A stretch of DNA of 64,000 bases from Oculina patagonica (lineage: Eukaryota). Below are positions 1,763-61,182 of this stretch, one piece after another; the stretch's first letter is position 1, and each line of letters starts with the position of its first letter. The notes beneath the pieces were generated by a model that did not search any database, was not told the DNA's origin, and worked only from the letters and a program-made list of their open reading frames with translations. Made by a program: the position numbers and the translations under genes. The stretch is from the NCBI RefSeq assembly GCF_052425735.1, contig NC_135759.1, positions 41,044,001-41,108,000 of the forward strand, written 5' to 3'.

Positions 1763-4700
1763 CGCTGTGGAATAAATTTTGCAAGTTAGTTGCGTTCAGA
1801 CTAGTTTTTTAGACACTTATTGTTCAGGCTCAGACAACGTGTCTCTTCACATTACGTTTAGACTACGTGTCTGGACACGTTGCGTTTAGACTAGTTACAA
1901 GGGGTTTAGACACGCCGTGGCCCGTCCAAAGGGTGAAAAGGTGAGGTTTTCGTACCTCCTATACAAGTGTGGATCCACCACAGTTCTTAAACAACATTTT
2001 AAGTACGATGCCTTGGTAAAAGTGCACAAAAAATAAAAAGGATTCCCAGCTTTCTACCCATTCCACTTGCATGTTACAAACCAAAATTGTGGCTATGCAT
2101 GGGCCACTGGCCTTGATCCGAGCTACTTATATTAAGGAAAGCATTTTTTCTCGTTTTTTTTTTTTCTCGATAAACGAGAAAGTTTCAGTTTATTCAAGAG
2201 CTTTATTTTGCGTTACTTCTTTCAAGATTGTTCAGAAAATTGATTTATTTGGTACCTTTTGGACGATTGATCAGGAAATAATGTTAAACAATTTAAGAAA
2301 TGACCTGGATGATCTTTGACTTAGGATGGTCAGCCGATATCACATAAAAAGTCATTACATGCGCCAGACATGGCGAATGTTAGTGATATTCCGCATACAT
2401 GAATTTAACAAAGAAAGCTTCGAAAGAGATTTCATTTGTGACTGCTTTTAAGTTGCATTATGACTGCAAGACGACGCTATCGCGGCGATCTTTGATTTTT
2501 TCTCGCACTATTTTTGGACATTTGAAGATAAACCTAAAAACGGTACCTGAGAATTTTGTCTCGGCCGACGAAAAACTGTACTTTGTGCATCTTTTTGGAA
2601 AAAGTGTCTTTCGGTGATGCCTAGAACAGGAAACAGGATGTTGTTTCTGACTGCTTTTTGTCTCTTTGTGACACAAGCACAGCATCCATGCTAGGTTCTT
2701 TTCTTTTCCGCCATGATTATTGTTACAAATGCGAGGCAGGTGTTTTGGCGCCAAAAACCCACGCGTTATGCAAACTGTGAGCTTTGCCACTCAACAAAAC
2801 GTACGTCCCATATTCTTCGGTTTATTTTTTTAACTTTTCGTCGACGTTGCTTTCCTTTATAGTAATCATATTAATTGATAATGTAATGTTGAATATAATA
2901 AAAATGGTCGCCTTCGTTGTAATATCGGAAGTTATTTCGTGAAGTCTGAAATTACATTAATTAACGCATCATGGCTCGAAGTTCCCTCGAGAAATAAGTC
3001 GATATTAGTATTTGTACTCGGTAAATACCCAACGGAGTAGACTCCTTATTTTGAAGGAGTATCGTAGTCCACATTTTTACGCTTTAATAATTCCTTGGCG
3101 AAGGTTTTGACTTAAACATTGCATGTTGACAAAGAAAACTGCACAAAATTAAAATATTTTTTGTACTAAACTGGGTAAAGACTAGAGTAAACAAAGGGTT
3201 TAGAAAATTATAAAAATAAATTGATCTAATACAGTTATTCAAGAAGTAAACGTCCCCGACTGTTTTTGTAATGTGATTGCCGCCTCTATCGAGTATTATT
3301 AGACTAGCATACTGTGCCTTTGCAGAAACACTCTGTCTAGCCAAACCATCCCAAAAAAGTTTTACATTTGATAATTTTGTGTCTTACCTCGGAGCGATCT
3401 CGGCGGCAGAGCGCACTGTAGTTAATTCGTCGCTAAGGGTTTAAAAATCGTTTTCTAACCGGTGAAGTCAAGCTGAAGAAAACACGAATGAAGTGTTATT
3501 GGTCAAATGTGGTAACACCCTCGAACATAATTTTTTCTTGTTTTGAATTTCCTTTCTTCCGTTAGATCATAAATCCGTAAAGTAATTGAATGTTTTGTCA
3601 ATATGAAGGGAGGTGAAAGCCACAGGAATCTTCCTTGAGATCACGTAGGTGACAAAACGTTGGCCGTTCACTTCTTCCCACAGATTAGACTTCAAACATG
3701 GCGGCGTCCCAACTTACGCTGGGTAATTTTTTCCATGTCTCGTACTTGCTAGGAAGCAAGACGAAAGATTATGTCAGGTTGAACAGGAAATAGGTAGTGA
3801 CAGACGTACGAATAAAGAGACTTTTCCAACAAAGTACGCTGTAGAATTAGAACACCTCACAAGAACTGCTACTTGAGTGAAAGTCCGCTTCTTTCTTCAC
3901 CAGCCTTTAGAATTGTGGTTGCCCTTGGCAATGGACAAATGATCGCTTGCAAAATGGAGATTTGCAGCAAACGTCTAAGCTTAATTGTGTTTTTGTTGCC
4001 GTAGATTAGAAGCTATAAAAAATGTTGCCTTTGTTTTCTACCCTGAATATTATTCATCTTTCGCGTTGTGTCGAGAAAACGTCAAAAGTGCATCGCTTGT
4101 AAATAAAGGAGGAATAAAACAACCGACATTTTCAATTGGAAGGCGCCGTGTTTTATCACTTTTGGCCTCGAATCAATTATATTTCTCTTTTTTTTTAGCC
4201 ATCAGGGTGATGTGAATGCTATATGTCAAAAACATATCAGTTCCATTTTGTTTCATTCTAATGGATTTTGAGCAAAACAAATTTTAATCCAAGGACCACC
4301 AATCAAAACGTTGTAGCTTGAAATTTAATTGACAATTCAAGAGAGATTACATGCAGCTGTTGTTTAGCAAGTAAAATAAGCTTGTCAATATTACCGTAGC
4401 TTGTATTTTGGTGTATAAAACTTGATTAAAGGAAATTATTAGGATTCGAGCAAATTTACCTCCATAAATAAACATAATAACCATAATTTGAGGGCCTTTG
4501 TTCAATTTAACGCCAGTGTAATCATTAATAGGCCTGTATATTTAACACGGCAATGCATGCGCTCGTTATTTTGTTTTATACAACCTCGTTTTCAGATTAA
4601 AAGAAAATTGCTGTAAATAAAAGGTTGAAAAACGCTAGGGGAAATTTATGATTGCCTGTGAATCGTTAGGGAGACCTGGACAAAATGCTGGGGAATAACC

Positions 4701-13019: not shown

Positions 13020-15053
13020 CTATCTGACTTTGGGAGAAGAGATCACTGAAATAACGTCAACGGTTGCCCACGTGATCACAGACTCCTTATCATTTGAAAT
13101 GATGCACGAGTACTGCCCGGCGTCATTCATGGCCGCCTTCCTTATATGGAGTACTGAAGAGGTCTGGTAACAAATGATACAACAAATAGTCAGTTCAGGG
13201 CTCAGTAAAGCTACATTTTTACATAAAGGGTAAAGATAAATAATTGACTCGTAAAATTCGTACAAAGTATCGTGATAACAAACCGTTTATTACATGTCTT
13301 TTCAGCCAATCAGAAGCCAAATCGTGACTTTCAAGCGCTTGCTTTTCCCGCGGTCGTTTTTCCCGCGCCTTTTTTCCTTGCGCTCGCTTGCTTTTCCCGC
13401 CTTTTCACGACGCGGCTACATTTTTCTTCGAGTTTTGATTGGTTCTTTACTTTGACTATAGTCGTACGAAGTGATTGGTTTTGTGACTATTGTCAAGTTA
13501 GTAAGTAACCGCTTTATATAATCATTACATAATACAAGGGCCCATTTACATGAAAAGAGGATGATCCTAGCACTTGGTTCATCCTCCTTTCATGTAACAT
13601 GGAATGAACCTAGTGCTAGGATCATCCTAGACTCATCCTATTACTAAGACAATCCCAGCGCTATATGTTTTCAGCCCGGTGGGGGGGGGGACGCGCATAT
13701 GAAAGTGACGGGGATGCTCGTTGTCTCGCTTAGGGTTGTAAATTTCGGATTTTTGGTCTCGCTTAGGGTGTTCCAGGCAAAACGCCAATATTTTTAGCCA
13801 TAATGGTCTCGTTTAGGGTTACAAACGAAGAAATATACACATATAAATTTTTATTCTTAGTTTTCTAGTATCTTTAAGGGCTCAAGAAAAGCTTGAGCCA
13901 CACCCAGGTTGGTCTCTTTTAGGGGTCCTTTTCAAAATTTCCGACGAGCATCCCCGTCCGTTTCATGGTTTTCAGCTTTCAGTTTACATGTGAAGGGTTG
14001 CATTTAGCCTTAACGCTAGGATGATCCTAGCGCTAGGATCATTCCATTTTTCATGAAAGGAGGATGACCCATGTAAATGGACCCTAGGACTATGATTGAA
14101 AGGAAACAATCGCTCACCTCTCCATCCAGGCATCTGGACCTTCTGTACCAGCGATATTTGAGGTTCTTGCCAGTAACATGACAGAAAAGCTTGCAATCTC
14201 TTCCTAATTGAACTGTGCAGGATTCAGGATGTTTCTCTATGACAGGGACTAACGACATACACGACAGATTAAGAAAAGAGCAGATGGCTATAGAAACGAC
14301 GATAATCTAAAAAAACGTTCTTTGCTATAACAGGCCCGTAGGGTGGATTCTGTTGAGGGGGGTATTTTTATTTTTTTGGAACGTATTTTAGCGCCGGAGG
14401 CGCTAACACGAGCTCCGAAGGTGCGAGCCTCTAGGGTGGTGTGGAAAAGGGGGGGGGTCTAGGATTTTTTTTCCCCAGGAAAAAAAATGAAATGCTCTGA
14501 AATTAGTGTGTGTTGTGATTTAGACATCTTGAAAATTTGGTTTCTGAGAAATGCGCATGCTTGCTTATATCAAGCCAACTAACGCTAGTTCTGATTGCCG
14601 CAGGCGCCACGACAAGGATGGAAAGCAAGACAAACATCAATTAACCAATCCAAAAGATTAGAACTTCACATTATAGTGCCAAAATGTTGCGGCTTCCTCC
14701 GATAACCCTGGCAAGGAAGGTAGGCGTCCGTGTAATCGACCTGTCACAGTCTTTTGGTTGTTTTGTGTATTTTTTTATTTCTTCAACCCCCCAAAAATGC
14801 CGACTTCAACAATTTTAGGGGGTTCGTTCGAACCCTCCCCCCCCCCCCACCCTATACGGGCCTGTGTAATCGTCGCAAATGATGCGTGGTATTTCTCTTT
14901 AAATGCGTAAGAATTATAATAAGCGAAAATCTACTGACAGTTGATTTTGACAAATTCTGCTAATGGCTTTTCACATATATTCTTTAAAAATCAACCCTTG
15001 CAACGAACCTTACTGGACTTCCTTAGTGTCAGATAGTACTCGTGGAAAAACAT
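13020..15053 (-). CDS. Small predicted secreted protein with one I-set-like Ig domain (3 exons, about 125 aa; may be part of a longer gene)
   Basis: Exons 15053-15009 (MFFHEYYLTLRKSSK), 14306-14118 (IIVVSIAICSFLNLSCMSLVPVIEKHPESC...KLFCHVTG..YRWY), 13163-13020 (TSSVLHI...DAGQYSC...). All phase-0 GT-AG junctions; Ig C-W-DxGxYxC pattern. Exon 1 and the stop are less certain. Confidence 0.6.
13537..14085. mobile_element. Palindromic MITE carrying a nested second element (13676-13967)
   Basis: Outer TIR agggcccatttacatg / catgtaaatggaccct. Inner element has gacggggatgctcgt / acgagcatccccgtc inverted repeats and is flanked by the 9-bp duplication gttttcagc (13667-13675, 13968-13976). Confidence 0.65.
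14331..14864. mobile_element. hAT-like MITE (CAGGCCCGTA...TACGGGCCTG)
   Basis: 10-bp perfect TIR; flanks tataa/tgtaa resemble a decayed 5-bp TSD. Confidence 0.6.
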
Positions 15054-26704: not shown

Positions 26705-27586
26705 TTAAGACACAGTGTTGACTGAATGTGATTGGCTAAAACCATTTATAAACCATTTACCATTGCTTCGCCGACAAAATTTGTAATAATGAATGCTTTG
26801 TCGAATAAACTTAAATACAATTGAAAAGAAATATTCCCCCGATCGAGTTTTTTTAAAACGTTTCGTCTTGAAATGCCAAAATAGAGAATATCTGACCTCG
26901 TTTAGAACAAATTTTGTTTTCATACAGACCGGAATTCGTTTATTGGTTAAACCTGGCCAAATCCGTAAATATACTCAACCGCTGCCAAGCAAGGGAAAAA
27001 TACAACCGACAACGAGCGCGGGAAACAAGCAACCGCTACCACAAGCGCGGGAAATCTGAGCAGAATTCTGAAAACTCAGTAACACAAGAGACCTAAGTTA
27101 TTATTATTAAAAAAAGAATCAAACTAAACGGAAATACCTATTGTGGCTCGAATCTTGTATTGTATAGCGTCACCTAAAAACGACCCCAAAGCGCGAGAAA
27201 CATGCAATCGGCACATTTGACGCGAGGAAATAAAAAACAACAAGCGCACGCGAAAAATTGCGCGTAAGCACAAATCACGATTGGTTTTAGTTTTATCCTG
27301 GACTAGATGAAAAATAGCAGTAAATAGGGGTTTTTCTCTTGATTCGTAAGGGAACGTTTCATCTTTTTTTGAGAGCAAACTACCGAAGACAGAAAAAGAC
27401 ACAACGAAAACAAACACATGCCATTACTTTGAATAGTCAATTTTATTTGTTCTACTGCTGTTCAAAGACGCAAAAATGCCCTATGGCCGTTAGAGTAGCC
27501 ACGATTGTAAATTTAAACTGCATTAGAACGTTGAAAGAAATTAAATGTTATATATATATATATGAAGTTATTATTGATGAAATTGA

Positions 27587-34167: not shown

Positions 34168-34275
34168 ATATTCTGTTTCACATTAACTTTATTAATATTA
34201 TTGTTGGTTTATGCAATAATGCAGCCATTGATTTTAGAAACTAGATATCTCGCTGATACACTTGAAACTTGTACT
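34168..34275 (-). repeat. Duplicate of the last DHFR codons and proximal 3'UTR (34414-34526)
   Basis: Both copies contain gattttagaaactagatatctcgctgatacacttgaaact. Confidence 0.9.
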
Positions 34276-34491
34276 GAGAGGATTGCATCTCCCCCTGGAT
34301 TGATGCCAGATCAAAAAAGAACACTCCAAGATTTCCGCTTTATAAAATTGTATTTGTACTTTAAGCCTTAAAGGCTCACATGGCTGTTTTCAAATCCTTT
34401 AGTCCATTACATTATATTCTGTTTCACATTAACTCTATTAATATTATTGTTGGTTTATGCAATAATCCAGCCATCAGATTGATTTTAGAAA

Positions 34492-40904
<6,413 letters not shown>

Positions 40905-41217
40905 GTTTTTCTCGTCCACACTCCACACTCACCTGTGTTCAAATGATTTTGGCGCGAAACGATGCGAAACGAAGGTCAATCAAGGGTAGCGTACAATGTC
41001 CACCAACTAAGAACAATTGTGATTGGTTACTGTAACCAGGTTGTGTTTCTTAGCTCAAATATGATTGGTTCACAAATCAAACCAAAACATAGATAGAGCG
41101 AAGCGACAGTGTGAACGCTAAACCAAAGTTGTGTTTTAACGGAGAAGTGTGCTGGTTGTAAGCGCTTTTATCTTCACTGCGAACTTTCAACTTGGCAAAG
41201 TCTTGTCATAAGACACC
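40905..41217. promoter_or_regulatory. Bidirectional DHFR/CPT1 promoter with dual E2F site, CHR and two CCAAT boxes
   Basis: Divergent ATGs at 40904 and 41218. On the minus strand: TTTCGCGCCAAA (40959-40948), TTTGAA (40943-40938), CCAAT (41026-41022 and 41068-41064). Confidence 0.75.
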
Positions 41218-44200
41218 ATGGCTGAAGCCAGGGCGGCTGTAACCAGGCCCGATGTTCGTCTTCACGCCGAAGGAACAAGCACAACAGAAGGCGAAGTTGA
41301 ATTGCTAAAAAGTACCTTCAAATCCCTCAAGAGATGCGCTTTCAGAACTCGGTAAGTTGAAGCACGTGGGTCACAATACCGTTATTGTTTTATATTTATC
41401 ATCTAATGATAATTCCCACCGTTGCTTTATTGAAATTGAAGTTTCATCTCGTTCATGATCTACGATTTCTCTATTTCAAACGTCCAAAGGTTGACCGTTT
41501 TGAGTATTTGGTTATGGTAACGCAAGCTTTCAGCTCAGCTAGCTTTAGTTGTGTTTACATCATTTGCATTTTGGTTAATAAGCTTAAGCTCAAGTTTTCA
41601 AACAAAATTTACAGTTAAAAGTCGAACATAAAAATATCCTTCCATTTTCAACCCTGGGGCAACTGGTAAACTTAAATATGTAGTTACGTAAGTTTACCAA
41701 AATTATTTCCGGCATTTGTGTGTGTTTGAGTACGTACGTAAGCTTACTATAAACTTGAGGGTATAAAATAACCTTCACTGGAATTTCCTGTTTTCAGTTT
41801 CGTACCAGTACATTCAAGAATTAATGGTTATCACGGTAATTTGTTCGTGAAATGAGGTCGCTAGGAGTTGTGTAGGCAAAATCAAGAATACGCTGTCTGA
41901 CTGTGTTTAATATTCTATTTATGACGTATCGACAAGGAACCGGTCTTATGCGTCCTTTCTGCGGAAGACTTTGATTTTTTTCCGCTTTCACTTGTTTTAT
42001 CAGAAAGAGAAATCTTCCTATGTGCGCTCGATTAACATTAAGTCTTAAGTTTTATGCTTCTCATTGTTTTGGCTTACCGAAGCGTTTTATATCTGCATTT
42101 TCTATTTAATTTTTCGCGTGATTTGAGAGATTCCAAATTGGACTTTGAACCTCAAAATGTTGGTCTCCCGCTGTTTTTCGAGATCATAAATTTCTTTGTG
42201 AGCCCAGTTATGACAATTTGCGTTTTATTCCAAGTCAAAATAAAAATTTTGTTTTGCTTTATATTTTTTTATATTTTTTATATATATTTTTTTTAAATTT
42301 AAGGGTGTAAGACTGTACATGTTATTATGTCAAAATTAACATTCTAACCCATATTCAATGAAGACACATACATGTATAATGGAAATTTTTTTGTCAATGG
42401 TCCCGTTGCTGGTGGAAAAGTTCTACCCACAGATATTTTAACCTTCTTCAGAAGAAGGAAAAATTACTTGAAAAAAAACTGTGGTTGTTTGCCATACAGG
42501 TGTAATTTACCAAAAATTTTGGGAAGATTCTGGTTAGATGTACAAAAATAATGGAACACAACTTTTTGGTTCATATCACTGGGAAATTTCTAGGAGGAGC
42601 AGAACTTTTGAACCCAGGGGGGTACTCAAAGAATACATGACGGATGTGAGGGGTCTGACATTTTTTGGGGGCGTTGAAAATTTACACGCTCAGTATTTTT
42701 TTTGGGTCAAGGGATCTGTCACATATTTTGTTGGTCTCAAAAAAATGTACGCCTATTTTAATGGGTCTTATCTCCTAGCGAACATTTCGGGTTTTCATTG
42801 CCATCAGTGGCTCAGAAAAATATTCATTCGAACTTTTTTTCAGCGACATGAATTTTTTTGGGTTGGAGATTTTGATACTAGGTATTTTTTTGGGTCTAAA
42901 ATTTCAGGCTTGTGTATTTTTTTGGGTTTGCAATATGAATTCTGTTTTTGGAAGTATTTTTATGTTTCAATCCTTTCTGCTCTATTTTGTTTTTCAGCCG
43001 ACAGATCACTAATGGATTATGGCCAACAACGTGGTCCAACTTGTTGAGTGCTGTGGTGGTTATTGCTGCTCTGCTCTATGCAACAGATTTCTATAAGCTA
43101 TCTTCCCTTCGGCCAGTTGCAGCGGCCTTATGGAAAGTGACATATCTGCTTAATTTAGATGAAGCCTATCCTTATAACTTCAGGCTTATTGTTGTATCAG
43201 TTCTGGTGGGAGTGGTGTTCTTTATTATTCTTCTCTATCTGCGGCAGTATCTCTTGAGGATGCTTTTAGCCTACAGGCAGTGGATGTGTAAGTGTGATAA
43301 TACCCATTCTTTAATACATACAGTAATTTGTGTACTTAGCTCTTGAAGGTTTTCTTGAACGTTTTAAGCCCAGGCCAAACAAGGACGAAAGTTAATGATG
43401 AGAGTTTCAACTCTCACTCTCGTTTGGCATGGTACTCTCATGCACTCTCGTGCGCTCTCATGCGCTCTCATCGACTTTGAACATGTTCAAATTTTTCATG
43501 AGAGTCAATGAGAGTTTTCTCTCGTTTGGCCCAAGTTGATGATAGTCGATGAGAGTTGACGTGAACTCTCACGAGAGTCAACTCTCGTCAACGCTCATCC
43601 TTGCTTGGCCCGGGCTTTAAAACCCCCACAAGTAAAATGTCCTGGAATATTGGAAACCAAACATAAGCACCACCTGAAAGTGCACTTTTATTGTCCAATA
43701 GTTTTCATTTGAATGTCTACTCAAAGTCATATATATGTTGTGGTTCAATTTTATCCTTGGTTCAAATTTTATTTTCTTTGTTTTAAACTCATTATCATAC
43801 ATTACCATACCAAAAACAAAGGAAAATAAAATTTGAACCAAGGATTAAATAATATTATTAAATAAATAATATTATTGAACCACAACGTATACAAAGACAT
43901 ACAGTACCGCTAAAAGTAAGTTACCACCTCTCGTCTCGTTTCTCGCGAGATGAGATTCTAGTCTCGCGAGAATCAACGAAGTGGAAATGTCTGGAATAAA
44001 TTACGGCAATTATCTTACGAGAAAACGATTAATCTCTCGCGAGAGTTTTCGCCGTTTTGACAACTAAAGTTCGAAGTTTTTGCCTGATTGGAAAGAGTGC
44101 TGATTTGTTGGCAACGATCAGTTTGTCTTTTTTCACTCGTAAGAAAAGTTCCATTTGAGATGAATGTGTGTGCTAGCGAACTCGAGAGAGCTTTTCAATC

Positions 44201-47200
44201 GAAAGTTGTCGCTTTGCTGGTCTTTATTCTTTCTATCACGAATGCAAAAGGTGAATTAAAGCAACACAAAAATCAAGAATCAAAAGCAAAGCACTTGCGT
44301 TACACTGCAACATCTTCACGGGTTTGCATTAAATGTTGCGTGCGTGCTAGCGCGAGAAGCGGTTGAATCGAAACTTGTCGCGTCGCAAAAGAATTTTTCT
44401 TATCAAAAACATAAACATAAGTCATAGTTCAAGTGATGATCACCGTTTGATTCAAAATAGTGCTCTACATAAGTCATACATATTTTATATCCTTGAGTTG
44501 TATTTTATAGCCTCCACTTCTGTCAATACAGATTTAACTCATTTTCATAATGATTATTATAATACAGATGAGCCCCCAAGATCACAGAGCAAACTAACAT
44601 TGCTGTGGGGTCTAATGGTAAAGCTTTGTGCTGGTCATCACCCAAAACTCTTCAGTTATCAAAACTCTCTTCCAAGAATGCCTGTGCCAAATTTGAGTGA
44701 CACTTGTAAAGCTCTTTTACGGTCCGTGAAACCAATCTTGGAAGACGATGAGTACAAAAAGATGGAAGCACTTTCCAAGGTTGGTTTGCGTATTTTTAAT
44801 CAACACACTGTAGTTGTAACTTATTTAATTAAGGCTAGTAAAAAATTAAACTATCGCCAGGGTGGTTGGTTATTGAACAATCTGTTATAAATTCCTTTCT
44901 TTGGCTCGGGTACGATTTGAACCCACAACCTTTGTGTTACATGTCCTCTGCTTTTATATGCATATTTTTTAGTATCAGGATTCACACTTGCGTGTAGCAA
45001 TTATATAGATATTATTACATGTAATTTTGTTCCTTGTGTGCAAATACCTATTATAGCTCAGATGGTAGAGCAGTGGACTTGTAAATTCAAGGATGATGGT
45101 TCTTATCCTACCTGAGCCACTGAATCATCTTTTCATTTACAGCAACCCTCCAAGTTAAGACCATTTAAAGTCCCCATGGCAACTAAAATTTTGGAGCTGG
45201 CAACTAAATTGGAATCGAAGTCGCCAGCCTGGCGACTAAAATTGAGAAGAAGAATTGAAAGCATGAGCTTAATTTAGCGACTTAAATTTTTCAATGGCTA
45301 CCAAACTTGAGCAGTCAGTCGCCAAATGGCCACAAAGGAAAAAAATAAACTTGGATGGTTGTACAGTTTTAAAATTATCATTTATTTGATTTGCCTGAGG
45401 ATGGTTCTAATGTAGAATGAAAACACTGTCTAGTTGACATGAAACAATAGTTGTGGATTCAACATCTCTATTTATCATTATAGCTAGTGTGCAGAAAATC
45501 TTGATTTTACCTTTTTTTACTTTAGGATTTTGAAAAGAACCTAGGTCCTAAACTCCAATTCATCCTAAAACTGAAGTCATGGTGGGCCCCAAATTATCAC
45601 ACAGATTGGTGGGAAAAATATGTGTATTGCATGGGCCGCTCACCACTACCTATCAACAGCAACTACTACTGTCTAGACCAGAGCTGGCACCCTACATATG
45701 ACCAAGCATCAAGGTGTGAACTGATTTCTAACTAGTTCCCTTATTTTATTTCCAAATTGGCTTATTGGAATTTTGTTGTTCAGTCTGAGATGTCAATTGT
45801 GTCAATTGGTGAATATATCTGGTGCATCCTTCTTTTTTTTTTTTTTACTAACACAGAGCTGCAACCATGTGCTACTTCTTTCTGAAGTACTATCAGGAGA
45901 TTGAAACAGAGGACCTGGAACCTTTGTTAATCAGGAAAACCATTCCTATCTGTATGTGGCAGTATGAAAGGACATTTAAAACAACCAGGTATATAAAGTC
46001 TTAACACCTTGAAATGATGTGCACCTGTGTGATTGGTGTTCTATAGTCCTAATGTGCTTCTTACAGGAACTCGTTGAATTTGCTGAGGTCCATCGACTAC
46101 TACAGTCATAGAACTGATGATTCTTGTTTAATGATTTGTCGCAATTTCATTTTTAGTGCTGTCACTTCTTTTTGGGTCATGCCGCCTGTTGAAATTTACC
46201 CTTGCAGGGCCTCAGTCCATGTGCTGAAAGCCAGTGAAATGCAACAGCACTCTGTGCATTATTAATGTTCTCTTGCATTTTGTGAACCTTCCAAACAACT
46301 TGATATTGCGGACGGACGGTCAACCAGTGGTCATCTTCAAAATAATATTGTTATACAACTGGGAGTGGAAATAACTGAAAAAGTGAATATTGATAAATTA
46401 CATTATCACATCAAGCTAACAATTCAAACATGTACATGTTATAGTGTATTTCAATGTGTTCAGTCAAGCGATTGATTTTAATTAGAATCTCGTCTTACAG
46501 GAGGGTAGTAACTTACTTTTGAGCAGTACTGTAATCAGGTTCATTTTAAGGATCATTTTTATTTACAATATACACCCTGCGTTTTGATTATAACTGTTTT
46601 GTTTCTTTTCAGAATTCCAAAAGAGGATGTGGATGAAATTGTTCATTTTGAACACCAAGAACATGAGGTTTGTAATGTTGGATCATTCAAAATTTAAATC
46701 AATCCAACTGCTCATTGTGCCTGACTTACCCTTGTTATTTTCCCATAAGCATGACAGAGTTACAAATGCTGTGACCTGGGGTCAATTCAATAAAACATTT
46801 TACAAGTGTAATTTACAAGTGTAGCTATTGTTTTAAAGGTTGAGAACAATAGCTACACTTGTAAATTACACTTGTAAATGTTTTATTGAATTGACCCAGT
46901 GTAAGTTAGAGTAATTAATAAGGCTTTTTCAAGGGGTGGGGCCATTGGCCCCACATCCAACCTCCAATGTGAATGGGGCGGGGAGTGTTTATCTGTTAGG
47001 CCACTCTTCTCCTTTGACCCATCCTACATGGTTGAATCTACAAGCGGCTATGGTCCCAGCCAGCTTAGCTTTTAAGACCATTAAGACATGTTTAAGCTAA
47101 ACCACCATGACAAGGTGACATGCTCAGGGTGAAAAAGATAGTACTTACAGAATCCATTGATATCTGAAAAAGTTTGGCTCCTTCCACAATCCCATGGGCT

Positions 47201-60897: not shown

Positions 60898-61182
60898 TAG
60901 AGTGGTTTTCACTTGAGTGTCGAAAGTAAATTGCGTTTGCTTTGGTTTTGCATTACTACGCTTTGTGGTTGGCTTAAAAATCTCGCGCCACTTTCTCAGC
61001 CAATCAGAACTAAAACCAAAACCAATCGTGACTCGCTCGCGCACGTTTTCCCGCGCTTCGTGCCAGCTACATGTATTTACTTCGAGTTTTGATTGGTTCA
61101 CTGGATTGTCTGTGTCCTTTGTGATTGGCCAGAGTAAATACTTTGGTTTTGGTTTTACGATACTCAATTGAAAACTGCTCTA
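60898..61182. mobile_element. MITE (tagagtggttttca...tgaaaactgctcta); partial relatives at 13300-13510 and 27210-27310
   Basis: TIR and internal agccaatcag...ttcgagttttgattggtt shared within the window. Confidence 0.75.

What the first reader, a model, noticed from the sequence alone, without database searches (positions are those of the whole stretch)
40938..41068. Exact mammalian DHFR dual-E2F element plus CHR and twin CCAAT boxes in a probable cnidarian DHFR promoter
Seen: on the DHFR sense strand, 44-55 nt upstream of the ATG, is TTTCGCGCCAAA. TTTGAA follows 4 nt later, and two CCAAT boxes 42 bp apart lie upstream. Established: TTTCGCGCCAAA is the overlapping inverted E2F site at the start site of mammalian DHFR genes; TTTGAA is the CHR bound by LIN54/MuvB (DREAM); CCAAT/NF-Y pairs are typical of cell-cycle promoters. 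Inference: an identical 12-mer at the same gene, in a similar position, suggests a cis-element conserved since the cnidarian-bilaterian split or strongly convergent. A rough chance estimate for a given 12-mer in 313 bp on two strands is about 4e-5 at uniform base composition.
Basis: partly seen in the sequence, partly recalled or inferred. Interest (0 to 1): 0.8.

Follow-up and report, generated by a model that had tools for sequence, protein, structure and literature searches.

The report
Conserved E2F site in coral DHFR promoter
A stony coral's dihydrofolate reductase gene has, next to its transcript start, the same double E2F-type DNA motif as mammalian DHFR; five other stony corals keep the motif too, which suggests very old cell-cycle control of this gene, although the letter-for-letter match to mammals is probably coincidence within a constrained binding motif.

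Summary
TTTCGCGCCAAA lies at 40948-40959 (- strand), 44-55 nt upstream of the DHFR ATG (40904). TTTGAA follows 4 nt later, and two AACCAATCA boxes lie 42 bp apart.

The genome is Oculina patagonica. The 313-bp spacer is a bidirectional DHFR/CPT1-like promoter. Spliced RNA contigs place the DHFR mRNA 5' end near 40926-40929 and the CPT1 5' end at 41135.

The element is not neutral. Six stony-coral DHFR promoters carry TTTC[G/C]CGCCAAA 21-55 nt before the ATG. It is the best-conserved 12-mer of the spacer. An unbiased word search over five of these promoters finds only it and the CCAAT box.

Nematostella has a degenerate copy plus a TTTCCCGC, and amphioxus has one TTTCCCGC. One octocoral and one sea urchin locus have none.

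- The 12-mer occurs 912 times in this genome, partly in repeats, so the chance estimate is about 14 times too low.
- Only 2 of 6 corals have the exact mammalian spelling.
- TTTGAA is conserved in only 2-3 corals.
- CCAAT boxes and the CPT1 partner replace mammalian Sp1 boxes and MSH3.

Verdict: a real, probably E2F-bound cell-cycle element and a new member of a known kind. Base-for-base inheritance from the cnidarian-bilaterian ancestor is unproven. The scan also noted the CPT1 pairing separately (s1-294364).

The parts
40948..40959 (-). Dual inverted E2F-type element TTTCGCGCCAAA. It contains TTTCGCGC on the DHFR sense strand at 40959-40952 and TTTGGCGC on the + strand at 40948-40955.
   Evidence: Exact match. 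Conserved as TTTC[G/C]CGCCAAA in 6 stony-coral promoters. Top-scoring 12-mer window of the 3-coral alignment. The only 12-mer shared, with at most 1 mismatch, by 5 promoters; 0 of 300 shuffles gave any shared word.
40938..40943 (-). TTTGAA (CHR / CHR-like element), 4 nt after the E2F element.
   Evidence: The position fits the E2F/CLE tandem definition in PMC5716687. Canonical in Oculina and Desmophyllum, ATTGAA in L028, absent in Pocillopora, L035 and L041. The background rate of TTTGAA is 0.001 per bp per strand.
40960..40985 (-). Conserved upstream flank (CCTTGATTGACCTTCGTTTCGCATCG). It includes a second TTTCGC half-site-like repeat. Function unassigned.
   Evidence: Scores 21 of 24 in 12-mer windows of alignment A3. 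Near-identical in Desmophyllum and partly kept in Pocillopora and Nematostella.
41020..41028 (-). Proximal CCAAT box (AACCAATCA), a candidate NF-Y site.
   Evidence: ACCAATCA is the only exact 8-mer shared by all 5 coral promoters. An NF-YA gene is present in the genome.
41062..41070 (-). Distal CCAAT box (AACCAATCA), a candidate NF-Y site.
   Evidence: Its flank is conserved with Pocillopora.
40816..40929 (-). DHFR exon 1: 5' UTR of about 22-25 nt, then coding sequence from the ATG at 40904 to 40816.
   Evidence: The joint 39514->40816 is seen in spliced contigs of runs X1 and X2. The 5' end of an X2 contig is at about 40926-40929. A low-depth X1 contig (2.8, against 895) covers 40926-41119. 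The gene model equals P0270.
34492..40904 (-). DHFR coding gene of six exons: 40904-40816, 39514-39465, 36852-36747, 36255-36132, 35011-34899 and 34570-34492.
41135..41350 (+). Exon 1 of the divergent carnitine acyltransferase (CPT1-like) gene, with its ATG at 41218.
   Evidence: mRNA contigs of X1 and X2 both start at 41135 and splice to 42997-43287 and 44568-44780. Pfam Carn_acyltransf match. The same head-to-head partner is present in Desmophyllum, Pocillopora and Nematostella.

Best explanation
The 12-mer is a functional binding site for E2F/DP, made of two overlapping inverted half-sites. It sits about 20-30 nt upstream of the observed 5' end of DHFR mRNA, in the core of a roughly 205-bp bidirectional DHFR/CPT1 promoter.

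Inferred mechanism, by analogy with mammalian G1/S genes: in non-dividing cells a repressive E2F/DP-pocket protein (DREAM-type) complex occupies the site, and in proliferating cells activator E2F/DP drives DHFR transcription for thymidylate and purine synthesis. The two upstream CCAAT boxes, probably bound by NF-Y, would provide basal activity for one or both genes. In Oculina and its nearest relative the TTTGAA 4 nt downstream may add a LIN54 contact, making an E2F/CHR tandem, but this part is not general in corals.

Shown here: the sequence, its position relative to transcript ends, its conservation, and the presence of an E2F with an intact DNA-recognition helix.

Inferred: E2F occupancy and cell-cycle-dependent output.

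The identity with the mammalian DHFR element reflects the same regulatory logic at the same gene and a strongly constrained motif. It does not demonstrate inheritance of each base.
For: (1) The sequence matches the E2F consensus TTTSSCGC on both strands. It is identical to the mammalian DHFR probe core, described as two overlapping E2F sites (PMC3526358; PMC5622404).

(2) Conservation. TTTC[G/C]CGCCAAA lies 21-55 nt before the ATG in Oculina, Desmophyllum, Pocillopora and three unnamed corals from Logan assemblies (L028, L035, L041). A DHFR tree places all of these in one clade with 99/99 support, including a lineage outside the Oculina-Desmophyllum-Pocillopora group.

(3) The element is the top-ranked conserved 12-mer (23 of 24 matches), while overall spacer identity is 44-60%. 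A word search with no prior motif finds only this element and ACCAATCA in all five genomic promoters, and 0 of 300 shuffles give any shared word.

(4) Position. RNA contigs end at about 40926-40929. In another coral the longest transcript contig starts inside the element.

(5) The Oculina PCNA promoter, a canonical E2F target, carries TTTCCCGCCAAT-TTA-TTTGAA.

(6) The genome encodes E2F/DP-family genes. One DNA-binding domain aligns to human E2F4 (PDB 1CF7, E 2e-24) and keeps the RRIYD helix. NF-YA is present.

(7) E2F consensus sites also lie near the DHFR ATG in Nematostella (-19) and amphioxus (-103).

(8) E2F motifs are reported as enriched at marker genes of progenitor cell clusters in another cnidarian (bioRxiv 10.64898/2026.08.01.742136).
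Against: - There are no binding or expression data for any coral.
- Transcript ends come from assembled contigs, which cannot fix a TSS.
- The octocoral Dendronephthya (5 kb upstream) and the sea urchin (3 kb upstream) show no strict consensus. These annotations may miss 5' UTR exons.
- 570 nt upstream of the Oculina thymidylate synthase ATG lacks the consensus.
- The 12-mer is common in repeats of this genome, so sequence alone is weak evidence.
- The conserved block could serve the divergent CPT1 gene, or start-site selection, rather than cell-cycle control.
Confidence: 0.72

Rival explanations
1. The conserved block is a core-promoter or start-site element, or the site of some other factor. 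It would be needed for constitutive bidirectional DHFR/CPT1 transcription, with no E2F binding and no cell-cycle role.
For: The block lies right at the mRNA 5' end. Conservation extends beyond the 12-mer into flanks with no assigned factor, 40960-40985. The DHFR-CPT1 pairing is itself conserved, so constraint could come from shared promoter architecture.
Against: What all corals share is precisely the E2F consensus with T/A runs on both sides; the flanks vary. The same motif is at PCNA. The site always hugs the DHFR side, at least 175 nt from the CPT1 start.
Confidence: 0.13
2. This is true site orthology: the dual E2F element at the DHFR start was present in the cnidarian-bilaterian ancestor and has been retained base for base in corals and mammals.
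For: The same gene, a similar distance from the ATG, and the same inverted dual arrangement. E2F consensus sites lie near the ATG in Nematostella and amphioxus as well.
Against: Position 5 varies among corals. Nematostella has TCTCGCGCTAAA at the aligned place, and amphioxus has TTTCCCGCCGTT. The rest of the promoter differs from the mammalian one: CCAAT boxes and no GC boxes, and CPT1 rather than MSH3. No alignable flank exists between the phyla.
Confidence: 0.15
3. This is a chance occurrence, or a remnant of one of the repeat families that carry the same 12-mer, with no function.
For: There are 912 genomic copies against 58 for the control word, and about half of the sampled copies are in repeats. 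Other repeat-like units in the window combine CCAAT and E2F-like words.
Against: The DHFR flanks do not match the sampled repeat families. The orthologous position is kept in six corals. It is the top conserved window, and 0 of 300 shuffles give a shared word.
Confidence: 0.03

Closest known systems
Mammalian DHFR core promoter (TATA-less, Sp1 GC boxes plus two overlapping inverted E2F sites at the start site; expression peaks at G1/S)
   Same: The 12-mer TTTCGCGCCAAA is identical, at the same enzyme gene. It lies close to the transcript 5' end and tens of nt before the ATG, and the promoter is bidirectional (PMC3526358; PMC3078682).
   Different: The coral spacer has no GGGCGG or CCGCCC boxes (my reading) and uses two CCAAT boxes instead. 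The divergent partner is a carnitine acyltransferase, not MSH3 (the MSH3 pairing in mammals is from my own knowledge). Four of six corals spell the element with C at position 5.
E2F/CLE and CDE/CHR tandem elements bound by DREAM in mammalian cell-cycle genes (Mueller et al., PMC5716687)
   Same: There is a 6-nt CHR-type word exactly 4 nt downstream of an E2F site, with either E2F orientation allowed. The Oculina and Desmophyllum DHFR promoters fit this definition. Oculina PCNA has the same pairing with a 3-nt spacer.
   Different: In mammals a canonical TTTGAA next to an E2F site in an S-phase gene is reported as exceptional. Here TTTGAA is canonical but is conserved in only 2-3 of 6 corals. 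The composite occurs only 3 times in the genome, one of them in a repeat. A LIN54 CXC-domain search was blank and uninformative.
NF-Y-bound CCAAT boxes of TATA-less and cell-cycle promoters
   Same: Two boxes with the flank AACCAATCA lie in the core promoter and are conserved across corals and Nematostella. NF-YA is encoded in the genome.
   Different: The spacing varies from 23 to 43 bp among species. The boxes lie between two divergent genes, so which gene they serve is unknown.

Membership tests
E2F/DP binding site | Match to the consensus TTTSSCGC | tested here: met
   TTTCGCGC on the - strand at 40952-40959 and TTTGGCGC on the + strand at 40948-40955.
E2F/DP binding site | Location in the core promoter, within about 200 bp of the TSS | tested here: met
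   The mRNA contig 5' end is at about 40926-40929, 19-33 nt from the element. The evidence is contig-level only. In L041 the transcript contig starts inside the element.
E2F/DP binding site | Phylogenetic conservation above the flanking sequence | tested here: met
   Six of six stony-coral promoters have it. It is the top window at 23 of 24 matches. It is the only 12-mer shared with at most 1 mismatch, and 0 of 300 shuffles give any shared word.
E2F/DP binding site | A cognate factor with an intact DNA-recognition helix encoded in the genome | tested here: met
   PF02319 hits at five places in the genome. The domain at G000:C9:2578522-2578710 aligns to E2F4 (1CF7) and keeps RRIYD.
E2F/DP binding site | Physical occupancy by E2F and proliferation- or S-phase-dependent expression | not testable with these tools
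   No ChIP, EMSA or synchronised expression data could be reached. Only assembled contigs of RNA runs were available.
Mammalian-type DHFR promoter | Overlapping inverted E2F sites at the start site | tested here: met
Mammalian-type DHFR promoter | Sp1 GC boxes upstream | tested here: not met
   No GGGCGG or CCGCCC in the 313-bp spacer (my reading). CCAAT boxes are there instead.
Mammalian-type DHFR promoter | Divergent partner gene MSH3 | tested here: not met
   The partner is a Carn_acyltransf (CPT1-like) gene in Oculina, Desmophyllum, Pocillopora and Nematostella.
E2F/CHR(CLE) tandem (DREAM site) | A CHR-type hexamer starting after a 4-nt spacer downstream of an E2F site | tested here: met
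   ATCA then TTTGAA. The definition is from PMC5716687.
E2F/CHR(CLE) tandem (DREAM site) | Conservation of the CHR part in orthologous promoters | tested here: inconclusive
   TTTGAA in 2 corals, ATTGAA in 1, unrelated sequence in 3.
E2F/CHR(CLE) tandem (DREAM site) | LIN54 (CXC/TCR domain) encoded in the genome | tested here: inconclusive
   PF03638 gave no match, but it is a 38-position domain searched exon by exon and the controls were also blank.
NF-Y CCAAT box | A CCAAT pentamer with conserved flanks, plus NF-YA in the genome | tested here: met
   ACCAATCA is shared exactly by all five coral promoters. NF-YA lies at G000:C2:17910308-17910909.

The most novel reading that the evidence does not exclude
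The dual inverted E2F element at the DHFR start site is a single ancestral eumetazoan cis-element, kept at the same gene and nearly the same place in stony corals and mammals for more than 600 million years. If so, it would be one of very few transcription-factor binding sites traceable as orthologous between cnidarians and vertebrates. A further possibility is that corals add a canonical CHR to it, at both DHFR and PCNA, making S-phase genes direct MuvB/LIN54 targets in a way that is exceptional in mammals.
Probability: 0.15. Interest if true: 0.65.

Novelty: new member of a known kind. Interest (0 to 1): 0.38.

Why it matters
E2F control of S-phase genes is known from plants to mammals, so an E2F site at a coral DHFR gene is expected in principle. 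I found no paper describing it for any cnidarian in the full-text library.

What this window adds is a concrete, experimentally tractable example:
- a roughly 205-bp bidirectional promoter whose only deeply conserved words are an E2F double site and CCAAT boxes;
- the same arrangement at PCNA;
- natural variants (G or C at position 5, CHR present or absent) across corals.

It could serve as a compact proliferation-responsive promoter for cnidarian transgenesis. It could also serve as a test case for how far binding-site-level conservation reaches between cnidarians and bilaterians.

Tried and rejected
- A 38-aa exon query gave only fragments and a sponge DHFR as the best full-length hit. A search with that sponge protein found no cnidarians. 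Aligning the window's exons to full-length DHFRs solved this.
- Look-ups for the Actinia and Xenia proteins found no record. Fragment P0001 led to a 792-bp contig of no use.
- There are no raw-read RNA runs, so the TSS rests on contig ends. Runs X15 and X19 are DNA of close relatives, about 93% identical. Their differences inside the promoter were not listed, so they add nothing on conservation.
- 570 nt upstream of thymidylate synthase has no E2F consensus. An acceptor-like site just before the ATG suggests an unfetched 5' exon, so this is uninformative.
- The composite E2F+TTTGAA pattern occurs only 3 times in the genome: at DHFR, at PCNA and in a repeat. That is roughly what chance would give for the number of E2F-like 12-mers, so I do not claim genome-wide enrichment of the tandem.
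- The LIN54 domain search was blank and uninformative.
- The nearby DHFR-like paralog has no proximal consensus, so it offers no second copy of the element.
- The idea that the promoter derives from the CCAAT/E2F-bearing repeats was rejected. The flanks differ, and the promoter is shared with Nematostella.
- I did not compare with mammalian genomic sequence directly because the look-ups were exhausted. The mammalian element is taken from published probe sequences only.

Full report
**What is there**

On the - strand of the window, exon 1 of a DHFR gene starts with an ATG at 40904. The sense strand upstream carries these features:
- TTTCGCGCCAAA at 40959-40948, which is -55 to -44 from the ATG;
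- a 4-nt spacer, ATCA;
- TTTGAA at 40943-40938;
- two AACCAATCA boxes further upstream (+ coordinates 41020-41028 and 41062-41070), with the CCAAT pentamers 42 bp apart.

The exact 12-mer occurs once in the window.

I built a six-exon gene model: 40904-40816, 39514-39465, 36852-36747, 36255-36132, 35011-34899 and 34570-34492. Its translation is identical to the database protein P0270, a 186-aa Oculina patagonica protein that matches Pfam DHFR_1 at 1.4e-41. P0270's contig length equals that of the window's contig, so the genome is the stony coral Oculina patagonica.

On the + strand an ATG at 41218 opens a carnitine acyltransferase (CPT1-like) gene. The 313 bp between the two ATGs is therefore a bidirectional promoter, as the scan note s1-294364 also said.

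**Transcripts**

Only assembled contigs of public runs were available, so these ends are approximate.
- Two runs (X1, X2) are spliced. Both show the DHFR intron-1 joint 39514->40816.
- A DHFR contig in X2 ends at about 40926-40929.
- In X1 a low-depth contig (depth 2.8, against 895 for the mRNA) covers 40926-41119.
- CPT1 contigs in both runs begin at 41135 and splice 41350->42997 and 43287->44568.

The two transcript starts are therefore about 205 bp apart. The E2F-type element lies roughly 20-30 nt upstream of the observed DHFR 5' end, and TTTGAA lies about 10 nt upstream of it.

In another coral the longest DHFR transcript contig (L041) begins inside the element, at CCCGCCAAA. This resembles the mammalian situation, where the element sits at the start site. 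That statement about mammals is from my own knowledge; the probe sequence and the description "two overlapping E2F sites" are from PMC3526358 and PMC5622404.

**Chance**

In this genome the 12-mer occurs 912 times, against 58 for the reversed control word. Of 20 sampled copies, 6 belong to one repeat family and two further pairs belong to two others. The empirical expectation for 313 bp is about 5e-4.

**Conservation**

Using DHFR proteins found with an alignment of the window's exons, I fetched these loci:

| Species or assembly | Locus |
|---|---|
| Desmophyllum pertusum | L029 |
| Pocillopora verrucosa | L030 |
| Nematostella vectensis | L033 |
| Dendronephthya gigantea (octocoral) | L034 |
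| Strongylocentrotus purpuratus (sea urchin) | L044 |
| Branchiostoma (amphioxus) | L045 |
| Unnamed coral, Logan SRR28602248 | L028 |
| Unnamed coral, Logan SRR22097841 | L035 |
| Unnamed coral, Logan SRR24517704 | L041 |

The element, its position relative to the ATG, and what follows it:

| Species | Element | Position | Spacer and next 6 nt |
|---|---|---|---|
| Oculina | TTTCGCGCCAAA | -55 to -44 | atca TTTGAA |
| Desmophyllum | TTTCCCGCCAAA | -44 to -33 | ttca TTTGAA |
| Pocillopora | TTTCGCGCCAAA | -52 to -41 | atca TTTCAC |
| L028 | TTTCCCGCCAAA | -53 to -42 | atct ATTGAA |
| L035 | TTTCCCGCCAAA | -32 to -21 | no CHR |
| L041 | (contig starts) CCCGCCAAA | -33 to -25 | no CHR |
| Nematostella | TCTCGCGCTAAA at the aligned place | -58 to -47 | also a consensus TTTCCCGC at -19 to -12 |
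| Amphioxus | TTTCCCGC, then cgtt, TTCAAA and ATTGG | -103 | the only consensus in 3 kb |
| Sea urchin | no strict consensus in 3 kb | | |
| Dendronephthya | no strict consensus in 5 kb | | |

A DHFR tree puts all the coral sequences in one clade (99/99 support). The L035 and L041 species form a sister group to the Oculina-Desmophyllum-Pocillopora group. The element therefore spans a deep split within stony corals, but the species behind the Logan runs are unidentified.

**Is it more conserved than its surroundings?**

In the MAFFT alignment of the spacers, Oculina is 44% identical to Desmophyllum and 60% identical to Pocillopora overall. The E2F 12-mer scores 23 of 24, the top value among 315 windows, shared only with overlapping windows. 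That is higher than the start of the CPT1 coding sequence, at 21 of 24.

A search with no prior motif gives the same answer. Among all words of the Oculina 200-bp upstream region, only two are present in all five genomic coral promoters: ACCAATCA (exact) and the E2F 12-mer (at most 1 mismatch). None of 300 shuffles gave any shared word.

**Trans-factors and a second target**

- The genome has E2F/DP-family winged-helix hits at five places.
- One domain aligns to human E2F4 of PDB 1CF7 (E 2e-24) and keeps the RRIYD recognition helix.
- NF-YA is present.
- A LIN54 CXC-domain search was blank but uninformative.
- About 840 nt upstream of the Oculina PCNA ATG, ahead of what looks like a 5' UTR intron, lies TTTCCCGCCAAT-TTA-TTTGAA, with a further inverted TTCCCGCGC nearby.
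- Genome-wide, the composite TTTSSCGCCAAW-N3-4-TTTGAA occurs only three times: at DHFR, at PCNA and in a repeat. This is suggestive, but it is about the number chance would give for so many E2F-like 12-mers. I do not claim enrichment.

**Interpretation**

The most economical reading is a bona fide E2F/DP site, with two overlapping inverted half-sites, in the core promoter of DHFR. It would act as in mammalian G1/S genes: repression by E2F-pocket/DREAM complexes in resting cells and activation by E2F/DP in proliferating cells. For the mammalian background see PMC3078682 and PMC5716687. The CCAAT boxes, presumably bound by NF-Y, would support basal activity.

The TTTGAA sits exactly where PMC5716687 defines a CHR-like element: six nt after a 4-nt spacer, with either E2F orientation allowed. 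However, it is canonical in only two corals and has one mismatch in a third. Any LIN54/MuvB contribution is therefore lineage-restricted at best.

Binding and cell-cycle dependence are inferred, not shown.

**Comparison with mammals**

Same: the 12-mer, the gene, proximity to the start site, and bidirectionality.

Different: no GC/Sp1 boxes and CCAAT boxes instead, CPT1 instead of MSH3 as partner, and a variable fifth base.

Only two of six corals have the mammalian spelling, and Nematostella, amphioxus, the sea urchin and the octocoral lack the 12-mer. The letter-for-letter identity is therefore better explained by a strongly constrained, nearly palindromic optimum than by unbroken inheritance of each base. 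The regulatory link between E2F and DHFR may well be ancestral. I put true site orthology at about 15%.

**Novelty and score**

I found no description of a cnidarian DHFR promoter in the full-text library. E2F motif enrichment in cnidarian progenitor cells is reported in a Physalia preprint.

This is a new, well-supported member of a known kind. It is a useful example and a possible tool, but not a surprise to a cell-cycle or evo-devo specialist. Interest: 0.38.

Noticed in passing
window 40905-41217; L029, L030, L033, L028, L035: The head-to-head DHFR/carnitine-acyltransferase (CPT1-like) pairing is conserved in Oculina, Desmophyllum, Pocillopora, two unnamed corals and the anemone Nematostella. 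It is absent at the octocoral and amphioxus loci. This looks like hexacoral-wide microsynteny of a bidirectional promoter.
   Followed up: partly
G000:C2:41035040-41039720 (about 9 kb before the window's first base); L026:9017-9114, L002, L003: A second, divergent DHFR-like gene on the + strand, 40-63% identical to DHFR in the matched exons. Its 700 bp upstream has no proximal E2F consensus.
   Followed up: partly
whole genome; L006-L025: TTTCGCGCCAAA is about 16-fold over-represented (912 copies against 58 for the reversed word). Six of 20 sampled copies lie in one repeat family, with flanks such as ...ACGTTAAAA / ATTAAGGAGTAATTTGTCACC.... Two further pairs lie in two other families. The remaining unique copies are still far above the control.
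   Followed up: partly
window 13290-13460, 26960-27110, 61000-61100: Repeat-like units bounded by CCAATCAG ... TTGATTGG that carry one to three TTTTCCCGCG (E2F-like) words. These are possibly mobile elements spreading promoter-like motif sets (compare scan notes s1-317129 and s1-310892).
   Followed up: no
window 2744-2755: A perfect palindromic double E2F word, TTTGGCGCCAAA, 38 kb from the DHFR site. Its context was not examined.
   Followed up: no
G000:C1:4159527-4159545 (L050): The only other genomic copy of the 19-mer TTTCGCGCCAAAATCATTT. It is followed 150-210 nt later by three tandem units of about 28 nt, each with GCGGGAAAA, and then by ATTGG boxes. This is either a promoter with many E2F words or part of a mobile element; integrase- and RT-like ORFs lie nearby.
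   Followed up: partly
G000:C4:61892718-61892738 (L046): The Oculina PCNA upstream region carries TTTCCCGCCAAT-TTA-TTTGAA plus an inverted TTCCCGCGC about 30 nt before it. It lies about 840 nt upstream of the ATG, ahead of an apparent 5' UTR intron.
   Followed up: partly
L035, L038, L039, L040: In an unnamed coral (Logan SRR22097827-44 and SRR28116772), DHFR transcripts use at least three alternative upstream 5' exons. These are spliced to one acceptor about 18 nt upstream of the E2F element, so the element is in the 5' UTR of those isoforms. L035 joins DHFR and antisense CPT1 transcripts in one contig.
   Followed up: no
window 34240-34337: A degenerate partial duplicate of the last DHFR coding exon (ending ...[10 protein letters not shown]) lies about 230 bp downstream of the real one.
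   Followed up: no
window 39640-39810: DHFR intron 1 holds a near-perfect inverted repeat, a foldback or MITE-like element, whose arms include TTTGGCGCC and CCAATCAG words.
   Followed up: no
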